A stretch of DNA of 63,555 bases, filler included, from Intoshia linei (lineage: Eukaryota > Animalia > Orthonectida): assembly GCA_001642005.1 (NCBI GenBank). It is 7 parts of 7 records of this genome, joined end to end, with 100 filler letters (N's around TTAATTAATTAA, not from the genome) between each part and the next. Parts side by side here need not be neighbours in the genome. Positions count along the whole stretch, not along the records: positions 1 to 26,396 come from LWCA01000474.1; 6 more parts are not named here. One strand, 5' to 3'. Both the position numbers and the translations under genes were made by a program. Position 1 is the first letter of the stretch; each line of letters opens with the position of its first letter. Positions 7,601 to 26,396 of this stretch are shown here, piece by piece. Under the pieces are notes generated by a model. It was not told the origin of the DNA. It searched no databases and saw only the letters and a list, made by a program, of their open reading frames with translations.

Positions 7601-10600
7601 AACAAACCAACATCAATTTAATAAAATTGATATCCACACTTTAGTATTATTTGAAATGTAAAATTATAAAATTATGATTACAGTAATATTTAGAGCTCGA
7701 CCAGAGTACACGGTTCCAGTTGGTTTTGGAGGATATGTGGAAGTTATAAATGGAAAAAGTATTTGGAAAAAAGATGTCACTATTCTAGCAGTACCGTACG
7801 ATACACCTATTCCGGGGTACAGAAATAATGTAGTAAATACATTACGTTTGTGGTCAGCTAAAGCCAATAATGCATTTGAATTTGAAAGATGTAAGGTTTA
7901 TAATAGAGGTCATGAAAGGAATTTTTATTAAAATAAATTATTAGTGTGACAATGTAAATTGTGCACATTTATTATTGTAATAATAATTATTTATCATTGC
8001 ACTTTTTAAAACAATTAAAGAAGTAATACTATTCCTCACAGTTTCTGACCTCATATATTTATAATACAAAATTTGATATTCAATTTAGTTAACGTTGGAG
8101 AATATGTTGATTCTGTCATTGAAAAAACTCAAGCCGAAAATATTAGCAAAGTTTTGTATCCAAATGACAATGTATATTTTTAATATTATAATGGGTGTGA
8201 CTATGAAAAAAATAAAAATTTCATGGACACATGGCCATGAGAGGGCTGTGATGGGCCGATTATTCTAATTAAATAAATTTGATGTTAGAAAAGGTTTTTA
8301 TATGGTTTTGTCCAATTTTTTTTAAATGTGTATATAGGGTTCTACAATTTTAATCTGACTGGGCCGACTGTTATACTTTTATATTTGTGAGTTTTATACT
8401 TGATTTAAAAATTGATAAGTCGTGTTAATCATATAATATACATAACATGAAATAATATTTTATTAGGCATTTTCTGGCAAAGCCTTACGTTTAAAACAGG
8501 AATATTTTTTGGTGGCGGCCTCTGTTACGGATACTATTAGAAAATTTAAAGGCACAAATGCATACAAGAAAAATTTGCATTCTAGAAAAAAACTATGGAC
8601 AGATGTTTATTCTGAAAAGGTAATTTTAGTTCATGGTAAATTAGCGTAAAAGTATAGTTTGGTTGTTATTTCTCTATTTGTTGATATTTATATACATTAA
8701 GGTTGCATTACAACTAAATGATACTCACCCTTCATTGGCTATACCAGAACTTATGAGAGTATTAATGGACGAAGAAGGAATATCATATGAGGATGTAATT
8801 AAACATTTTTAGTGATTAATATTTAAACATACTAGGCATGGAGGTGTACTAAAATGTCCTGTTCATATACTAACCATACTGTTTTACCTGAAGCGCTAGA
8901 ACGGTATTGATTTTAAATTTTTATCAACTAAATATAGTCAATTTAAAATATGTCATATTAATAAAATAAACAGTAAATGCTATTTTCGAGTATCGGAGGT
9001 GCGAGAAAATTTTTCTAAAAATTTTTCATTTTTGTATAAAAACTATCAAATATTGACAATATAAAATTTGTAAATTTGACGCATATAAAACATTATGATT
9101 CCAAAACCAAAGTATGGAAACATTATATTATATCGCTGTATTTATTTATATATTTATATCTTTTTGACATTAGTTGGGAAGTGTCTCTTCTGGAAAAAGT
9201 TCTACCTCGTCATTTACAAATAATTTATGATATAAATGCACGATTTTTAGAGGTAATTGGTTGAAAGTCTTAAATATTTTTCTATTTTTTTGATTTATTT
9301 AGGAAGTAAAAAAAATTTATCCTGGAAATTTTGATATGATTCGAGATATGTCGATTGTTGAAGAATCCCCTGTAAAAAGCATAAATATGGCACATTTATC
9401 GATTGTTGGATCACATGCAATAAATGGAGTCGCAGAAATACATTCTAATATTATTAAAACTAAAACGTAATTTATCGCAACTTTGATTTTTTTAATTGTA
9501 TTTGAACTCATTAATTACATAATTCATGAAAAACTATGTAATTAGTGTAATTTAAAATTGAAATTGTAGTACCTTTCAAAAATTAAAATTGTTTATCAAT
9601 ACAATAAAATTATAATTTATTTTGGGTATTTTATTATTAATCAACTTAAAAATTAATTTTTAGATTTAAAAACTTTTATACCATTTGGCCTAAAAAATTT
9701 CAAAATAAAACTAATGGAATAACCCCTCGACGGTGGCTTATGCTGTGCAATCCTTCTCTCTCTCATTTCATTACTGAAGTAAATTTTATTTTTATATACA
9801 TAAGTATAATATATAGTACTAGCTTGGCTATTTTGTATTTCCTATAAACAGAACCTAGTTTTGCCGACGGTGGACTTTTCTAATTCTACTAAAAAAATTT
9901 ACCTGAACCTCTGGAAAAAAAACTTTTTAACAAAAAGTTTTTTTTATAATAAAGTACAAAAAAATTCTCGTAAAAACGCTCTTTTGAAAATATGATACTA
10001 AAAAAATACCATAAAAACCCTCTTTAAAATTTGGGGAAAAAAGTTTTGTTAAAAAGTTTTTTTGAAAATAAAGTACAAAAAAAATCCCATAGAATCTCTT
10101 TTGAAAATGATGACTAAAAAACATGGAGCTCGACGAAATTTTTGTAAAATGTGTGGCCATTAAAAATTATATCTTTGAATATCATAACTATTTTGTGTCT
10201 AAAATTTAAAATTTCAAGTCAAGAATATGTTAATAGTCAACATTTGCTATACTCTTTAATAATTTTTGGTTTTCCATTTTTTGAGGAATCGCTAAACCTA
10301 TTAAACCAGTGGCCACCAAACTTTTTGACATGGGGGCCGGAATAACTACAAAAAAAATCGACGGGCCAGATGGAAAATTACGATTTAAAATAAATAAGTT
10401 TTTTATGATTTATAAATGACAAGTCGATAGTATATATTTAAAATCTATGTCGATGATATATGATAATTTGTAAGATATTACCGGTGTATTTTGTAATTGA
10501 TTTGTAGTTCGCGGGCCCTAGTTTGGTGATCACTGTATTAAACTATCCAAAGTATAGCAAATCATGTTATATTTAATTTTAATTTTTCATATTATTAATA

Positions 10601-19929: not shown

Positions 19930-22900
19930 CTAATTAGGTCGAGGTTTATAGTTTTTAATGTCCGTCTTAGTATTAAGCACTCTGCGTAGAGTCAAATGTT
20001 TGTCCAAATTACAACGCGGTCGGTTAATAGGAGTTTTAACAAAATTATTGTACAGTGTGGCTCCACTTGTTTCAAACTTCAGAGGTTGGTTGAACGACTG
20101 AACAGGTGGTTGTCTTGAAATTGGAATTTGAGAAGTAGATTGAGGCGACAGTTTATCAATTTGAGTTGGTTTCAGTTTAACAGAAGAGGCAAAATTCGCA
20201 GAATTATTAATAACATATCCACTGCTACGCGATACACGTTGCATATTTGATATAATCTTGGAACCAAAATTCTGCGAATTCGCATTAATTGGAACAATTT
20301 CAGAATTCGGAGAATACGTCCTAATTTCATCTTGCTCAGTAAATACATTACTTTTTTGTTGTTTCGGAGTAGCCATTCGTATCTATTAAAATAAATATAC
20401 GTTTAAATGGTATCATACAAAAGACTGATTATGTGAATTCGTGGGTTGGCCTTTGTTTGGTAAAATTGTTATGATATTGGATGACGAATCCTTCCTCGGG
20501 TCATTATTATTAATAAATTGTTGATTTTTTAACAAATGACGAAACTGCTGCACACTAAAACGTTTTGCAATCTTCGGTCCACTCTGAATATTGCGAACAA
20601 TGTGTATTGGCCCCGGAGTAGAATTAGCTAAAATTGATCTATAGAATATAATAAACGTATTTACGTATATTCTTTTGTGGGTTTTGAGGTTTGGAAAACC
20701 TTAAATTTCTAGTAGATATTACACGAGCTAATTAAATTTAATTTTATATGGAACATAGAAAACTACCTTGCACTCTATTCTGCATATGATCGTTAGGTTT
20801 ACGTATCGTATTAATTTTAACAATATTATTCTGACGATAGCCAGTATCCGATCGGTTCATCCTTACGTTAAACTAAAAAAATTAGTACAATTTTTTTATA
20901 TATAATACCACATTGGGATTCGATAATCTACCATTATCTGAAATTGGTATATTTCGTATATTAACATTAGAGTAAGAAACTGTCGGTTTTTTAAATGGAG
21001 ATATGAAATTATCTTGAGAATTCTGAAAATGAATAGATGTATTCATTTTTTGCATTTGATATTGATCCAAAATCATTGAATTTTGCCGTTTTAACATTTT
21101 TTTTTTTGAATTTTTCAAGGTGGAAATTGTAGAACATTGTCGGTATTTTTTTTGATTATTAGAAATTGTAAATGAATTGGATATGACATTAGAATTGGGA
21201 ATAATTTGCTTGATAGTAGGTCGGTTTCCTCTCATAACATTGATATTATGGTTAACTATGTGAACAGACTTCCCTTTTACAGACATGGTTGATGCATTAT
21301 TTGATTTATTTTTAATATAGTTTTTGTGTTCTTCTAATTTCATTTTTGCCATAAATGCTTTCATGTCACCTGGTGAAATATATTCTGCAGAATCTGGCAA
21401 CATAACCGAATTGAGTTGCTTATTTCCATCCTGAGAAACAGATAAACGCTTACAACGACCAGTAGAGAACCTCACAGCATTTGTGAATCTAGCAGCGTAT
21501 AATTTGTGTAGTGTGACGAAGTTATCGCAAATATAATTAGCACCAGCCTTTTTGGGATTTAGAAAAATTTTCGCCTTATTATTCTTCTTTGTACCTGGAG
21601 GGTGGGTAGATATGTCTCCATCTTCTTCTTGTATTTTTATAATATGATCCAATCTATTTTGAATTTGACGGATAGATCTATTGTTATTGTCACATACAGA
21701 CTGAACAAAATCTTTCACGATTTGCCAATTTCCATTTTCGAAAATGTTGTAAATTCTTGAAAATACAAAGTTCAAAACCCAGTCTTCCTGAATTGTCCAT
21801 TGACACCTGTCAATTACAAATGTATTCTGTTTGTTCATTTGAATACGACCCGGCATTCCCTTATTCGTTTTATTTGACGACCTTTTATTGGAAGTCAAAA
21901 TGATGTTTTTACAAAACAATGATTTTGGACAACGATTAGTAGACAAATTTGAAACGTGGGTAATTTCTTTTCCAACATTTTGCTTTTTAGCTAAAAATAT
22001 ATGTAACAATATAATAAATATTATACTTTGTGATATTTTTTCTGGAGGCTGTCCGACATGATCTCTTATTTTGTAATTGTGATACAACATATTTTTATTA
22101 TTTACTATTTTCGGTTTTTCATCGGGAGTGGGAGGACGAAACATCTATTAAACGTTAAATTAAATAATAAATATACATACCTTAATGTAATTGTGGTGAC
22201 AAAGTATTTTCAAAAAACTCTAAAACAAAATGAATTTCATAATCTATTAAATTGAGCTGTACGCGATAGTAACATTAAAAACTGAAAAAAATAAAGGACC
22301 AACACCATTAAAAAATTTTACAAATCACCAGTACACCTGTTACGCCGATTAATACGAAGATGACGTTTTAGATAAATTGATATTCGAAATTGAAAAGAGA
22401 AACACAGTAAAAAATAATTTTTACCATTTTCGTTTGATAATTAAAGGCATTAATTACAAAATAATACTTTAAGATTATTATAATGTACGATATTAATCGA
22501 CTCATTAGAAAACATCGAAGCGACAAATAATTATTCTAGATAAAATCGTACACAAGGTGAAAAATTACACATAAACATTATTCAATTTTTTTTTCGGTGA
22601 GCCATAAAAATTATTGAAAAATACAAATGTTTATTTATATATACTTCTTACACGTAACGAAGAGATGATGATCAATTCGATAATAATATATCAATGCCAT
22701 GTAATTAGTCGACTATGTAGGTTATTGAAATTTAAGAAAATATCAAGAAAGTTTTTTTATTACCTATTTATACAGCTGTACTTTTAATATTAAGAATAAT
22801 AATTAAAAAATTTTTAAAAAAAATCAAAATTAAGTTGCGAAGCTTGAGAAGCTGAATCATCACAATTAAATGGATTTTACAATATGAATAAATAGAACAA

Positions 22901-25900
22901 AATTTATATATACATAATTATTTAAATAAACGTGTATAAGTGTGTCTCTAATCACATGTAATGTGTGTTGGGTAAAATTGAAAAGTTATATTAGAGACAC
23001 ACCTACACACATTACAAGACAAGAGGCAACTTAAACGTTTAATATAAAATATTTACAATATGTATATATAAATTAAGCATCTTAAGGAGAGGTTGATAAA
23101 TCCAAATTTTTTGTTAAATTCAGTTTGGAATTTACTTTATGGTTCGATAAATTTAAATTTGCTATCTGATATGGTTTGATGATTCTAATTTTATAACTTG
23201 AGGGTATGTTCTCAAGATTTGATCTATTAAGGCGAATAATGTTAATGGGTTTACCAATGGAATTTTTAAAATTGGCAGAGTTGGATATAATTTTTACATG
23301 GTTGCTATTAGTGTTTTTAGGCAATCTGAATACTCGAATGTTTTTAAATTGTGTTGGTATAAAGGTATTCAATACGTTTGGTTTGGGTTTGATACTAGTC
23401 TCTGAAATCTTAATTGGAGAAATGCGATTCTTTTGCAAATCGACATGTGGACGTTCCACGTGTTGCGAGTCTAGTCTAACGTTCTTAGACCTAGATCGTG
23501 TCTGAGCAACATTCTCCTTAATAAACTTCTGTGGCTGAATAGTTTTTACTTTACAGTTTTTTTTCTTCTTAATCTTATTTTTCTCAACTTTGACTACTAA
23601 AGGAGTTTCTTTAGGGGCTGAGTATTTTAGCAAAGACGCTCCACTCGCCAACATGTGAGAATATTGGGAACACTTAATTTGTTTTTTAGTAGGTTCAGGT
23701 ACAGCTTCATAAATATTTTTCATTTTGGATACCTGCATTTTATTTGTTTTCACATAAGTTAAAGGGTGTTCATTGGTAGTGTGATAAGCTGAATTTTTGG
23801 CGCGTTTAGACATTGGTTCATATAAAGTATCGTTCTAAAATAGAACTAAGATAAAATCATACAAATGTAATACCTGAACTGTTTCGTCTGGTTTTGGAAT
23901 GCTGGATTCAATGAGATCAATCGAAAACTGTTCAACGGGTGTAAACTAAATTTTAAAATAAATATTACATAAATAATGTAAAACCTTGTATTCGTCATTT
24001 TCTAAAGAATGTTCAATTATTAATTCATCTCTAAAATCATCATCAAAATCTACTTTATCAGCTTTGACTTCTGATTGTAATTTTTTGGCAGCTTCAACAT
24101 CCTCTTCGTCTTCCGCCTCAAACAAACATCGATTTATTTCGTCCTGAGAAATTTTATAAAGTTTCATTTCGTCTTTTGCAACATTTTCAAATATATCGTT
24201 AATGTTTGTCTTTTCAAAGAACTCGGTAGTAAATGATCCATTTTCTATTGCCAAGTCTCCAAGTAGTTTCTTTTGGTTAGCTTTGTTGAGAATATTCTCT
24301 TCAATTGTAAATTCAGATACAAGTCGGTAAATGTGAACATCTCTAGTTTGACCAATTCTGTGACATCGATCTTGCGCTTGAGCATCCATTGTAGGATTCC
24401 AATCAGAATCATAAAAAATTACACAATCTGCGCCAATTAAATTTATTCCCAAACCGCCACTTCTAGTCGACAATATAAAACAGAAAATTTTGTCATCGCA
24501 ATTAAATCTTTCCATCAAAGCTTGGCGTTTTTCAATTTTTGTAGAACCATCTAATCGGAAATATTTATAGTTGTGATAGCAAAGGAAAATTTCCAAGATA
24601 TCCAAAACTTTTGTCATTTGAGTAAATATTAAAACCCTGTGACTATTATTGTGCAAATCACGTAAAAGTTTATCCAAAGCTTGTAATTTACCACTGTCAT
24701 ATTGAATAAGTCTATTTTCCGGAAAAATCAAACTCTTTAACATGCACAAGGCATCAAAAGGCTGGGAAGTTTTTTTAATTTCTTTGTGCAAATTTGTCAA
24801 ATCATTCACATTTTGTTCATATTTGGAATTGTATTTAGATGGAGTGAACTTTATGTAATCACTTTTTACTTTATCATGATATATTGAGAATTTTTTAATA
24901 TTTTCATCACTTATGGACGGAACATGACAAAACGTTTTTGGTTGAATGGTAACAAATTTGATTAGATCGGATGTATATAATGCATTGGATTTATAAATTC
25001 TGTTACTGTTAGCATTTACAATTCTAAGTATTCTTTGGCGTTTATTACTAGCTCTTCGAAGTGCAATTTTTTCTAAAAATGGACTGGAAGGTGGTGGTTT
25101 GATATCGATTTTAACATTAGGCTTTAATAGATAGTTTTTTAATTCAACATCATTATTTCGTTTGTTTTTGAAAAATTTAATGGATGTTAACGTCATATCA
25201 CAATTATGTAGACTAACATCAACTTTTTTCTTAGTTAAATTAAGGAATATGGTGGGGACTTGGTATTGTAAACTTTGGTTGAAAAACGGACTTGAAACTG
25301 GTCGAGGGTCAAACAAATCTGGATGATTGCACACTTTTCGTAATTGCATCAACACGTTTGCTACATTAAGGAAACTACCAGAAACTATTTTCTGTCGCGT
25401 ATCTGATTTAGACATGAAATCGTCATATAGAAAACGTTGTCTTTTCGACATTCGACATCTTATAATGTGTTCATGTTTTTTCGGTAGTTGCTTTTCTACG
25501 TCATCTTTCAAACGTCTCAAAATAAATGGCCGAAGAACTTTATGCAGCGTCGTCAGTTGTTTTATGTTTGTATTCTTTCCAGATTCGATCAGTTCACTAA
25601 TCGGTTGATCAAACCAGTCTTTAAAGTCTAGGTGTGATTCAAACACTGAAGGCATTAAAAAGTGCATTAAACTCCATAATTCCATCAGACTGTTTTGTAA
25701 AGGTGTACCCGTTAATAACAAACGTTTTCTACTCTTGAAACCCAACAAAGTTTGCCATCTTTGAGATCTATAATTTTTTATGTGATGAGCTTCGTCCAAA
25801 ATTAAATAATGCCATTGCATTCTTCGAAATTTTGTAGCATCTTGCATAGCGATATTATACGATGTAATACACACATGAAATGCATTAGAGCGAGTCCAAC

Positions 25901-26216
25901 CTTTTCGCTTAGCAGACCGTTCTTTGTGAGAACCATAATACGTTAATATTTTTAAGGCTGGGCACCATTTTTTGAATTCAATTTCCCAATTTAACATAAC
26001 AGATGTAGGAACAATCACTAAGTGAGGCCCCCATATTGCTTTGAAACTTGCCAAATGTGCCAATAAAGCAATTGTTTGAATAGTTTTTCCAAGGCCCATC
26101 TCATCAGCTAATATACCATTTAACTTTCTATTGTGTAGCTTTAAAATCCACTCTACGCCGTCTTGTTGGTATGGTCGTAATTTATGTTTCAATAAAAATG
26201 AAACTTGTTTGATGTT
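19930..26216 (-). CDS. dom: Domino / p400-like Snf2 remodeller, long SANT-containing isoform; 5' part (HSA region) missing at the segment end
   Basis: Exons 26216-23985, 23945-23873, 23834-23733, 22219-22181, 22144-22027, 21990-20909, 20872-20767, 20727-20665, about 20627-20418 and about 20382-19930. ATPase motifs GILADEMGLGKT, LILDEAH, LTGTPLQN, QLRKVCNHP, LSTRSGGLGINL, QAQDRCHRIGQ. The p400/DOM-A-type tail has FRPPTP, PKSLF, SANT-like WTIQEDW...NWQIVKDFV...RSIRQIQNR and LYAARF. Confidence 0.9.
22932..23016 (-). promoter_or_regulatory. Candidate RNA stem-loop or pseudoknot in the domino short-isoform 3' UTR / alternative intron
   Basis: Arms 22990-23010 and 22932-22952 pair 21/21 on the minus-strand RNA, with two G-U pairs. 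A second perfect 12-bp helix pairs 23005-23016 with 22957-22968. Confidence 0.55.
23082..23732 (-). CDS. Alternative terminal coding extension of domino (read-through of the 23732 donor; short SWR1/DOM-B-like isoform)
   Basis: The frame stays open for 216 codons past CAG|GTATCC to TAA at 23082-23084, inside what is otherwise an AT-rich 1513-nt intron. The peptide is Lys/Asn/Ile-rich and low complexity. An ATTAAA lies about 40 nt after the stop on the minus strand. Confidence 0.7.
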   Translation of the reverse strand, partial: VSKMKNIYEAVPEPTKKQIKCSQYSHMLASGASLLKYSAPKETPLVVKVEKNKIKKKKNCKVKTIQPQKFIKENVAQTRSRSKNVRLDSQHVERPHVDLQKNRISPIKISETSIKPKPNVLNTFIPTQFKNIRVFRLPKNTNSNHVKIISNSANFKNSIGKPINIIRLNRSNLENIPSSYKIRIIKPYQIANLNLSNHKVNSKLNLTKNLDLSTSP

Positions 26217-26396
26217 CTAAATTTCAAATATATATCGTTATATAAATAAACAAATAAAATTAGGTAAAATATCAAAATTATTATATTATTAAGGATATTA
26301 ACAATTTGGTTTATATACTATTTCTTAGCATCGATATAAAACATACATCAATGACTCTGAAATAGACACAAAATAAAATAATGAAATTGTGAAAAA

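What the first reader, a model, noticed from the sequence alone, without database searches (positions are those of the whole stretch)
19930..23834. One domino gene with two C-termini: read-through (SWR1/DOM-B-like) versus spliced (p400/DOM-A-like)
Seen: after ...HPLTYVKTNKMQ there is a good donor (CAG|GTATCC at 23733/23732). Splicing it in phase 0 to a 39-nt exon (22219-22181) and then to 22144 gives MQ-SFLKILCHHNYIK-MFRPPTP, PKSLF and a SANT-like domain. Skipping the donor leaves 216 open codons ending at 23082, which is very unlikely by chance in DNA this AT-rich. Known: Drosophila domino yields DOM-A (SANT, p400/Tip60-like) and DOM-B (SWR1-like, H2A.Z loading) through alternative C-termini, whereas mammals use two genes, EP400 and SRCAP. 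Inference: this compact, probably non-arthropod genome keeps the one-gene, two-complex switch, suggesting it is ancestral. Automated annotation would probably split the locus into separate genes. The short tail here is basic rather than acidic, and its TRSRS segment is worth comparing with arthropod DOM-B tails.
Basis: partly seen in the sequence, partly recalled or inferred. Interest (0 to 1): 0.8.

Follow-up and report, generated by a model that had tools for sequence, protein, structure and literature searches.

The report
Intoshia domino gene, two possible C-termini
The parasite Intoshia linei has a single domino (SWR1/p400-type) chromatin-remodeller gene laid out so that using or ignoring one splice donor would give a SANT-containing or a short basic C-terminus, at the same junction as in molluscs, nematodes and insects, but no transcript data for this species were available.

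Summary
The window is a whole contig of Intoshia linei. On the minus strand, a SRCAP/Swr1-like ATPase exon is followed by two short exons. The second ends in CAG|GTATCC at 23733/23732.

- **Read-through:** it gives 216 open codons, with chance about 1e-8. Codon usage is coding-like and the tail is strongly basic. The stop is at 23084-23082.
- **Downstream exons:** a 39-nt micro-exon and further exons carry FxPPTP, PKSLF and a Domino/EP400-type SANT region (custom profile 31 bits; best shuffle 9.8).
- **Public annotation:** OAF68293.1 already joins everything into one gene. It uses a later donor (23136/23135), which makes the tail internal.
- **Comparison with orthologues:** A-type proteins continue into the micro-exon and WxPPTPP. 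B-type proteins start with Val and run into a basic tail. Two transcripts from one metatranscriptome differ exactly there, and the B form retains CAG|GTGAAG.
- **Copy number:** the assembly holds only one SWR1-class ATPase.

This is a new, non-arthropod member of the known DOM-A/DOM-B arrangement. Expression of both forms in Intoshia is not shown.

The parts
23985..26216 (-). Large exon with both ATPase lobes of a SWR1/SRCAP-class Snf2 remodeller. It is open from the acceptor at 26216, and the annotated CDS starts at 26099. The HSA-bearing N-terminus lies on another contig, C1291.
   Evidence: Pfam SNF2-rel_dom 3e-91 and Helicase_C 4e-27, about 200 aa apart. PDB phmmer scores: SRCAP 784 bits, Swr1 694, EP400 487, INO80 482. 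HSA on C1291 at 1.4e-13, and its ORF matches Domino N-termini at 1e-40.
23874..23945 (-). Short common exon (FTPVEQF...), flanked by 39-nt introns 23984-23946 and 23873-23835.
   Evidence: Present in the public model. Maps to positions 53-68 (TPIERYA motif) of the A-type Domino profile.
23733..23834 (-). Last exon segment common to both proposed products. It ends ...PLTYVKTNKMQ.
   Evidence: It aligns with the conserved ..LTYS..D..Q that precedes the A/B divergence in other animals.
23727..23735 (-). Candidate phase-0 5' splice site CAG|GTATCC, with the exon ending at 23733. This is the proposed A/B branch point.
   Evidence: It is positionally equivalent to the oyster NQ| junction and to TCCCAG|GTGAAG, which is retained in the B-type transcript L016 and removed in L017.
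23085..23732 (-). Read-through tail of 216 codons, starting with Val from the GTA of the donor. It is basic (K+R 43, D+E 11). The stop is TAA at 23084-23082.
   Evidence: Open-frame probability 1e-8 to 7e-8 and coding-like codon usage in this frame only. No Pfam hit. No match to the A-type profile. No homology to other B-tails beyond composition.
23130..23138 (-). Alternative phase-0 donor AAA|GTAAAT, with the exon ending at 23136. The public annotation uses it. This makes 199 tail codons internal and leaves a 916-nt intron.
   Evidence: Mapping of P0001 onto the window. It is one of 15 phase-0 GT sites in this exon. The 17 codons left before the stop would stay open by chance with P about 0.25.
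22921..23021 (-). mir-279-like hairpin, 61-161 nt downstream of the tail's stop. It lies inside the long intron, or in the 3' UTR of the short form.
   Evidence: Rfam RF00754 at 32.8 bits, E 2e-4 to 4e-5, below the gathering score of 56. Fold energy -29.9 kcal/mol, z -4.5. Single copy in the genome.
22181..22219 (-). 39-nt micro-exon of 13 codons (SFL...). It has a good acceptor, an in-frame TAG immediately upstream and no ATG inside.
   Evidence: It has the same position and nearly the same length as the 12-aa VFLSD..MP segment that oyster isoform X5 skips. The next exon starts at profile position 137.
22027..22144 (-). Exon starting M-F-R-P-P-T-P, the conserved M[WF]xPPTP motif of A-type Domino/EP400. 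It is followed by an in-frame 36-nt intron, 22026-21991.
   Evidence: RPPTP maps to profile positions 139-143.
20909..21990 (-). Exon with PKSLF and the SANT-type region. The profile match covers 21889-21452. The three predicted helices lie at about 21793-21620.
   Evidence: Domino-region profile at 31.4 bits, E 1e-8 in a database of 2002 sequences, best shuffle 9.8 bits. Protein-atlas top hits are Myb_DNA-bind_6 clusters at 0.91. The AF2 model has three helices at pLDDT about 70-78. The top Foldseek rows are short chains of human TIP60 TRRAP-module entries at E 0.09-0.5, then Myb domains.
19930..20872 (-). Four further C-terminal exons (20872-20767, 20727-20665, 20627-20419, 20382-19933) separated by 36-39-nt introns. 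The stop is at 19932-19930.
   Evidence: Mapping of the public protein and the sequence itself.

Best explanation
This is the single domino gene of Intoshia linei. It is a SWR1/SRCAP-class ATPase gene that keeps the bilaterian two-ended layout.

If the phase-0 donor CAG|GTATCC at 23733/23732 is used, a 1513-nt intron is removed. The transcript then continues through a 39-nt micro-exon into exons that encode M-F-x-PPTP, PKSLF, a SANT-type domain and a long C-terminus. That is a DOM-A/p400-like scaffold for a Tip60/NuA4-type complex.

If the donor is not used, translation runs on for 216 codons into a basic, probably disordered tail and stops at 23084-23082. The transcript would then presumably be polyadenylated inside what is otherwise the intron. 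That is a DOM-B/SRCAP-like subunit of an H2A.Z-exchange complex.

**Shown here**
- the sequence features and their coordinates
- that the tail is coding
- the homology of the downstream part to the A-type region
- that the junction is conserved
- that the assembly holds a single SWR1-class gene

**Inferred**
- that both transcripts are made in Intoshia
- that they assemble into two complexes

The public model, which places the tail inside the protein, is most likely a by-product of a gene predictor that cannot end a gene inside an intron. It could also be a third isoform.
For: 1. The ATPase is SRCAP/Swr1-like: 784 and 694 bits against 487 for EP400. Its lobes are split.
2. The tail is coding: 216 open codons with P of 1e-8 to 7e-8, and frame-specific coding codon usage.
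3. The downstream ORF matches a profile of the PPTP-PRSLF-SANT region from 12 metazoan Domino proteins at 31.4 bits, against 9.8 for the best of 2000 shuffles. Motif spacings are 59 and 43 aa, against 65 and 48 in molluscs. The fold and atlas leads agree.
4. Metazoan A-type proteins read ..LTYS..D..Q, then VFLSD..MP, then MW.PPTPP without a break. Oyster isoform X5 skips exactly the 12-aa middle piece, which marks both junctions. The Intoshia exons map collinearly onto this, and the tail falls exactly at the first junction.
5. The spacing from TPxE to [WF]xPPTP is 270 aa in the public model. It is 82-85 in molluscs and a shrimp, and 71 in oyster X5. Removing the 199 annotated tail codons gives 71 (arithmetic).
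6. B-type continuations that begin with Val and run into a basic tail occur at the same junction in a brachiopod, an octopus, gastropods, a rotifer, a sea cucumber, filarial nematodes and a stick insect.
7. Two transcripts from one JGI sample are identical for 1811 aa. They then diverge after ..TCCCAG. The B form continues GTGAAG.., an unspliced consensus donor, and the A form continues ATGTTT...
8. Eight of the nine introns in the public model are 36-39 nt. The exception, 916 or 1513 nt long, is the one at the branch.
9. Only one SWR1-class ATPase and only two HSA loci exist in the 41.6-Mb assembly. EPL1, YL1_C and MYST genes are present.
10. In the fly, DOM-B ends in exon 11, upstream of the DOM-A exons (PMC7239659).
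Against: - There is no RNA evidence for Intoshia. The protein searches returned only the annotated protein itself.
- The public model uses another donor (23136/23135) and is equally compatible with the DNA. The 17 codons between that donor and the stop are open by chance about one time in four.
- GTATCC is an ordinary donor, not a strong one. It is one of 15 phase-0 GT sites in the exon.
- The alignment of the short Intoshia exons to the profile is collinear, but each exon on its own scores weakly.
- The tail shares only position and composition with other B-tails, not sequence.
- Pfam SANT/Myb models and PDB phmmer do not detect the SANT region.
- Models with the B tail placed internally also exist for a stick insect and for Dirofilaria. 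Such a product might therefore be real.
Confidence: 0.65

Rival explanations
1. The public annotation is right and is the only product. The donor at 23136/23135 is used, the 199-codon basic stretch is a lineage-specific insertion inside one long DOM-A-like protein, and no short isoform exists.
For: OAF68293.1 has this structure. GTAAAT is identical to another donor in this gene (intron 20664-20628). Similar tail-internal models exist for a stick insect and for Dirofilaria. Fast-evolving parasites often carry low-complexity insertions.
Against: The insertion would sit exactly at a conserved exon junction whose GT is still present. It would triple the otherwise constant TPxE-to-PPTP spacing. It leaves unexplained why this one intron is 916 nt when the others are 36-39 nt. 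Ab initio predictors are expected to choose a late donor to keep a long ORF. In other taxa the same junction yields a terminal tail.
Confidence: 0.2
2. The gene has split. The ATPase gene ends at 23082, and the exons 22219-19930 form a separate gene for a SANT-only protein that starts at ATG 22144. The micro-exon would be a 5' UTR exon.
For: The exon at 22144 begins with ATG. The 860-nt AT-rich gap could hold a terminator and a promoter. A well-formed 36-nt intron directly upstream of the ATG is compatible with a 5' UTR intron.
Against: The Met is the conserved residue before [WF]xPPTP in other animals, not evidence of a start. The micro-exon matches the conserved coding micro-exon in position, length and its xFL start. 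A SANT-only protein would lack the HSA domain, and only two HSA loci exist in the assembly.
Confidence: 0.08
3. Only the spliced A-type product matters. The open tail is a retained-intron ORF with no function of its own, either a relic or a product removed by RNA surveillance.
For: The tail has no detectable homologue. Intoshia has lost many genes.
Against: 216 open codons with coding-type codon usage in 24-32% GC DNA are not expected without selection. YL1_C, a marker of SWR1-type complexes, is retained, and the only ATPase able to serve such a complex is this gene.
Confidence: 0.05

Closest known systems
[quoted passage not shown]
   Same: One gene carries HSA plus a SWR1-type ATPase in the common part. 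The long C-terminus has SANT, and the short one is unstructured. The short end is encoded upstream of the long-form exons. There is no separate SRCAP or EP400 gene.
   Different: The Intoshia protein is far smaller, about 1650 aa annotated plus the HSA piece, against about 3200 and 2500 aa. It has no poly-Q region. Its introns are 36-39 nt. Isoform expression and complex composition are untested here. I could not fetch the fly sequence to place its branch at residue 2008 on the same junction.
Human EP400 (TIP60 complex) and SRCAP (SRCAP complex)
   Same: The ATPase is closest to SRCAP. The FxPPTP, PKSLF and SANT block is of the type found in the A-type invertebrate Domino proteins compared here, which carry Pfam EP400_N. 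The top fold hits are short chains of TIP60 TRRAP-module entries. The basic tail recalls the basic, AT-hook-bearing tail of SRCAP in composition only.
   Different: Humans have two genes where Intoshia has one. Direct phmmer against the EP400 chains in the PDB finds no match for the SANT ORF. The Intoshia tail has no AT-hook core motif.
Domino proteins of other spiralians and nematodes in public databases (oyster isoforms X1-X8, Lingula, Octopus, Elysia, Biomphalaria, Brachionus, Brugia)
   Same: They share the junction after ..LTYS..D..Q. A-type proteins continue with the micro-exon and WxPPTPP. B-type proteins continue with Val and a basic tail.
   Different: Intoshia is the most reduced version. 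Its tail is 216 aa against about 260-830 aa. It has no isoform annotation, only a merged model.
Yeast Swr1 plus Eaf1
   Same: The same functional parts are present: HSA, a split ATPase and SANT.
   Different: In yeast the ATPase and the HSA-SANT scaffold are separate genes. Here they lie in one locus.

Membership tests
SWR1/SRCAP-class Snf2 ATPase | Snf2 N-lobe and helicase C-lobe separated by a long insertion | tested here: met
   SNF2-rel_dom covers aa 8-293 and Helicase_C aa 502-614 of the exon translation. The other Snf2 loci of the genome have adjacent lobes.
SWR1/SRCAP-class Snf2 ATPase | Closest solved relatives are SRCAP and Swr1, not EP400, INO80, ISWI or SNF2 | tested here: met
   Bit scores: SRCAP 784, Swr1 694, EP400 487, INO80 482.
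SWR1/SRCAP-class Snf2 ATPase | N-terminal HSA domain | tested here: inconclusive
   An HSA ORF at 1.4e-13 that matches Domino N-termini at 1e-40 lies on a separate 1528-bp contig, C1291. Its physical link to this contig is inferred.
DOM-A / p400-type C-terminus | Collinear [WF]xPPTP, P[KR]SLF and SANT block after the ATPase | tested here: met
   Motifs lie at P0001 positions 977, 1036 and 1079, with spacings of 59 and 43 aa against 65 and 48. The profile match is 31.4 bits against 9.8 for the best shuffle.
DOM-A / p400-type C-terminus | SANT/Myb domain recognised by general models or by fold | tested here: inconclusive
   No Pfam hit. The AF2 model has a three-helix core at pLDDT about 70-78, mean 57. 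Foldseek gives nothing below E 0.001, though the top rows are TIP60 TRRAP-module chains and Myb domains. The atlas lead is Myb_DNA-bind_6 at 0.91.
DOM-A / p400-type C-terminus | Glutamine-rich region after SANT | tested here: not met
   The C-terminal 570 aa of P0001 are rich in N, S and K and have no poly-Q runs (by inspection).
DOM-B-type short isoform | Tail produced by reading through the phase-0 donor after ..LTY..Q, Val first and basic | tested here: met
   CAG|GTA at 23733/23732, 216 codons, K+R 43 and D+E 11. The same pattern occurs in other taxa and at the DNA level in L016 against L017.
DOM-A/DOM-B alternative isoform system | Both transcripts and proteins are made from the one gene | not testable with these tools
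   No Intoshia transcript data could be reached. The searches returned only the annotated protein.
DOM-A/DOM-B alternative isoform system | No separate SRCAP or EP400 paralogue | tested here: met
   A six-frame search of the 41.6-Mb assembly finds one split-lobe SWR1-like locus. C1630 looks RAD54-like and C1247 ATRX/ARIP4-like by eye. The only other HSA locus is next to an ATPase with adjacent lobes on C475. The assembly is fragmented.
mir-279 microRNA family (side observation) | Rfam gathering score | tested here: not met
   32.8 bits against a gathering score of 56, though the full model is matched and the hairpin is stable.

The most novel reading that the evidence does not exclude
The DOM-A/DOM-B switch, made by using or ignoring one phase-0 donor after the conserved ..LTY..Q exon, is ancestral to bilaterians. 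Here it is seen in spiralians, ecdysozoans and a sea cucumber. On this reading, vertebrate EP400 and SRCAP are the two isoforms fixed in separate gene copies after duplication. Intoshia keeps the switch in minimal form, with a mir-279-like hairpin placed in the sequence that is intron for one form and 3' UTR for the other. That placement could couple miRNA processing to isoform choice.
Probability: 0.45. Interest if true: 0.65.

Novelty: new member of a known kind. Interest (0 to 1): 0.5.

Why it matters
The literature I could search describes one domino gene serving both the H2A.Z-exchange complex and the Tip60/NuA4 complex only for Drosophila. Scacchetti 2020 adds a remark that this may be widespread in arthropods.

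An orthonectid with the same layout, together with the same junction in molluscs, a brachiopod, a rotifer, nematodes and a sea cucumber, suggests the switch predates arthropods. It also suggests that vertebrates resolved it by gene duplication.

Intoshia offers a very compact version. Most introns are 36-39 nt, and the switch region is 1.5 kb. The control of donor use against intronic polyadenylation could be dissected there.

The result also flags the public Intoshia model, and similar models in a stick insect and in Dirofilaria, as probable mergers of two isoforms.

Tried and rejected
**Searches that found nothing useful**
- Pfam gave no family for the tail or for either downstream ORF.
- PDB phmmer with the 420-aa ORF gave only chance hits and no EP400.
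- The word search with the 420-aa ORF was blank.
- The full HMMER search of 1.84 billion representatives returned only the annotated Intoshia protein.
- Its 90% cluster has one member, and no encoding contig is on record. No transcript-derived fragments could therefore be found.
- A profile of ten invertebrate B-tails scored against the Intoshia tail was matched or beaten by 81 of 1000 shuffles, so there is no homology beyond composition.
- A regex for a TR.S..RL-type motif hit only vertebrate SRCAP tails.

**Steps that failed or were not run**
- A MAFFT alignment of the annotated protein region with orthologues misplaced the tail and was not used for the junction argument.
- The DBINO family search found nothing, but its control also failed, so it says little.
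- The Intoshia genome paper is not held.
It was rerun by reference.
- The exons were scored one by one by reference.
- A splice-site weight matrix was not built, because too few confirmed Intoshia introns were at hand.

Full report
**What the window is**

The 26,396 bases are one whole contig (C3473) of a 41.6-Mb, 3520-contig assembly with about 25% GC. The protein found by the large HMMER search is OAF68293.1, "hypothetical protein A3Q56_03951 [Intoshia linei]", on a contig of exactly this length. The organism is therefore the orthonectid Intoshia linei, a highly reduced spiralian parasite. Its median intron length is reported as 57 bp (PMC6543705).

**Checking the observation**

- A 756-codon open stretch (26216-23949) carries SNF2-rel_dom (3e-91) and Helicase_C (4e-27), separated by about 200 residues.
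- Among solved structures it is closest to SRCAP (784 bits) and Swr1 (694 bits), well ahead of EP400 (487) and INO80 (482).
- Two 39-nt introns follow.
- Reading on gives 216 further codons and a TAA at 23084-23082.
- With local base composition the chance of this is 1e-8 to 7e-8.
- Codon usage in that frame scores +0.28 bits per codon. The other two frames score -0.19 and -0.54, accepted exons 0.32-0.41, and the adjacent non-coding DNA -0.5 to -0.76. The tail is coding.
- The tail is strongly basic (K+R 43, D+E 11).
- The 39-nt exon 22219-22181, the 36-nt intron after it, and the exon beginning ATG TTT CGT at 22144 are all as described.

**What the public annotation does**

It does not. The 1651-aa public protein maps to ten exons from 26099 to 19933. 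It then splices from AAA|GTAAAT (23136/23135) to the same micro-exon at 22219. In that model the tail is internal.

Eight of its nine introns are 36-39 nt. The annotated donor is one of 15 phase-0 GT sites in the exon. The 17 codons between it and the stop would stay open by chance about one time in four.

The model starts at MGLGKT because the contig ends. The HSA-bearing N-terminus sits on a 1528-bp contig, C1291. Its HSA domain scores 1.4e-13, and its ORF matches Domino N-termini at 1e-40.

**Is the downstream part DOM-A/p400-like?**

General tools say nothing.

- There is no Pfam hit.
- There is no PDB sequence hit.
- The word search is blank.
- The big search returns only the protein itself.

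A search with the whole annotated protein returned Domino and SRCAP orthologues. Many invertebrate ones carry [WF]xPPTP, P[KR]SLF and a W.I.EDW.L stretch in a fixed order after the ATPase. Intoshia has the same three at spacings of 59 and 43 residues, against 65 and 48 in molluscs.

A profile built from that region of 12 orthologues hits the 420-aa ORF (residues 86-231) at 31.4 bits. The best of 2000 shuffles scores 9.8.

- The protein-atlas lead is Myb_DNA-bind_6 at 0.91.
- An AlphaFold model made with these orthologues gives three helices at pLDDT about 70-78, with an overall mean of 57.
- Foldseek finds nothing below E 0.001. Its top rows are the 133-154-residue chains of human TIP60 TRRAP-module entries, including "TRRAP and EP400", followed by Myb domains.

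I take the homology as established by the profile. The fold evidence is weakly concordant. There is no poly-Q region.

**The junction**

Across sponge, cnidarian, tunicate, mollusc and arthropod A-type proteins the sequence runs without a break..LTYS..D..Q, then VFLSD..MP, then MW.PPTPP. Oyster isoform X5 lacks exactly the 12 residues of the middle piece. Exon junctions therefore lie after the Q and before the MW.

Intoshia has ..PLTYVKTNKMQ, then the tail, then a 13-codon micro-exon starting SFL, then MFRPPTP. I scored the exons one by one against an A-type profile.

- Exon 23945-23874 lands on positions 53-68.
- Exon 23834-23733 lands around positions 108-124.
- The exon at 22144 lands on positions 139-143.
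- The tail has no counterpart.

Each short exon scores weakly on its own. The argument rests on collinearity.

The TPxE-to-[WF]xPPTP distance is 270 residues in the public model. It is 82-85 in molluscs and a shrimp, and 71 in oyster X5. Subtracting the 199 annotated tail codons gives 71.

The micro-exon has an in-frame TAG immediately upstream and no ATG of its own. If it is coding, it must be spliced to an upstream coding exon. The Met at 22144 is the conserved residue of the motif and is not evidence of a start. This argues against two separate genes.

**The other continuation exists elsewhere**

At the same junction, many database proteins continue with Val and a basic tail of roughly 260-830 residues instead. 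Examples are Lingula, Octopus, Elysia, Biomphalaria, Bulinus, the rotifer Brachionus, a sea cucumber, filarial nematodes and a stick insect. In the first 170 tail residues, K+R is 22-49 and D+E is 3-20. Intoshia has 37 and 9.

Val is what a phase-0 GT donor encodes when it is read through.

Two proteins from one JGI metatranscriptome sample are identical for 1811 residues and then diverge at this point. Their contigs share ...TCCCAG. The B form continues GTGAAGAAAAAG, a textbook unspliced donor. The A form continues ATGTTTATT.... A Brugia pair behaves the same way.

Models with the B tail internal, like the Intoshia annotation, also exist for a stick insect and for Dirofilaria.

The Intoshia tail has no sequence similarity to other B tails beyond composition. 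The TRSRS segment matches no shared motif.

**Genome context**

A six-frame search with the ATPase finds no second split-lobe SWR1/EP400-like locus.

- The other Snf2 loci have adjacent lobes.
- C1630 reads as RAD54-like and C1247 as ATRX/ARIP4-like by eye.
- The only other HSA domain lies next to an ATPase with adjacent lobes on C475.
- EPL1-domain genes, YL1_C and several MYST acetyltransferases are present. Parts of both complex types are therefore plausibly retained. I did not assign them to complexes.

**Comparison with what is known**

[quoted passage not shown] DOM-B ends in exon 11 and DOM-A in exon 14. The authors note alternative C-termini in several insects and a spider, and suggest the mode may be widespread in arthropods (PMC7239659; 10.1101/052746). 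I found no paper in the held library that extends this beyond arthropods. The isoforms are visible in public annotations, however.

**Verdict**

The public single-isoform model remains a live rival.

My probabilities are:

| Reading | Probability |
|---|---|
| Two-isoform reading | about 0.65 |
| Annotation-only reading | about 0.2 |
| Gene split | about 0.08 |
| Functionless tail | about 0.05 |

This is a new, non-arthropod member of a known kind. It is of moderate interest for the evolution of the SRCAP/EP400 pair.

**Side observation**

A stable hairpin at 23021-22921 lies 61 nt downstream of the tail's stop. Its fold energy is -29.9 kcal/mol with z -4.5. It matches Rfam mir-279 over the full model at 32.8 bits, E about 1e-4, below the gathering score of 56. 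It is single-copy in the genome.

Noticed in passing
window 22921-23021, minus strand: A stable hairpin (-29.9 kcal/mol, z -4.5) matches Rfam mir-279 over the whole model at 32.8 bits, below the gathering score of 56. It is single-copy. It lies 61 nt after the tail's stop, inside the one long intron of the gene, and may be an intronic or 3'-UTR miRNA.
   Followed up: partly
G000:C1291 (L011 75-1184, minus strand) and window 26216-26396: The HSA-bearing N-terminal part of this domino gene sits on a separate 1528-bp contig. The public protein therefore starts artificially at MGLGKT inside the ATPase. The window ends in an intron upstream of the acceptor at 26216.
   Followed up: partly
window 21991-22026, minus strand: A 36-nt intron (GTATAA...TTTTAG) inside the 420-aa ORF stays open in frame. 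The raw ORF therefore contains 12 intron-derived residues that the public model removes.
   Followed up: yes
whole assembly G000: No INO80-like split-lobe ATPase and no DBINO domain were found. The DBINO control also failed, so absence is not shown. The candidate with separated lobes on C1630 looks RAD54-like, and C1247 looks ATRX/ARIP4-like.
   Followed up: partly
P0116 (stick insect), P0058 (Dirofilaria), compared with P0043 and P0064: Public Domino models in other species also place the basic B-type tail inside an A-type protein, as the Intoshia annotation does. These may be merged isoforms in the databases.
   Followed up: partly
P0005 compared with P0021 (oyster domino isoforms X5 and X1): The 12-residue segment just before MW.PPTPP is itself alternatively included in oyster. 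The homologous 39-nt Intoshia micro-exon (22219-22181) might also be optional.
   Followed up: no
window 7674-7931, plus strand: An 85-aa ORF reads like a glycogen phosphorylase exon by eye. It was not tested.
   Followed up: no
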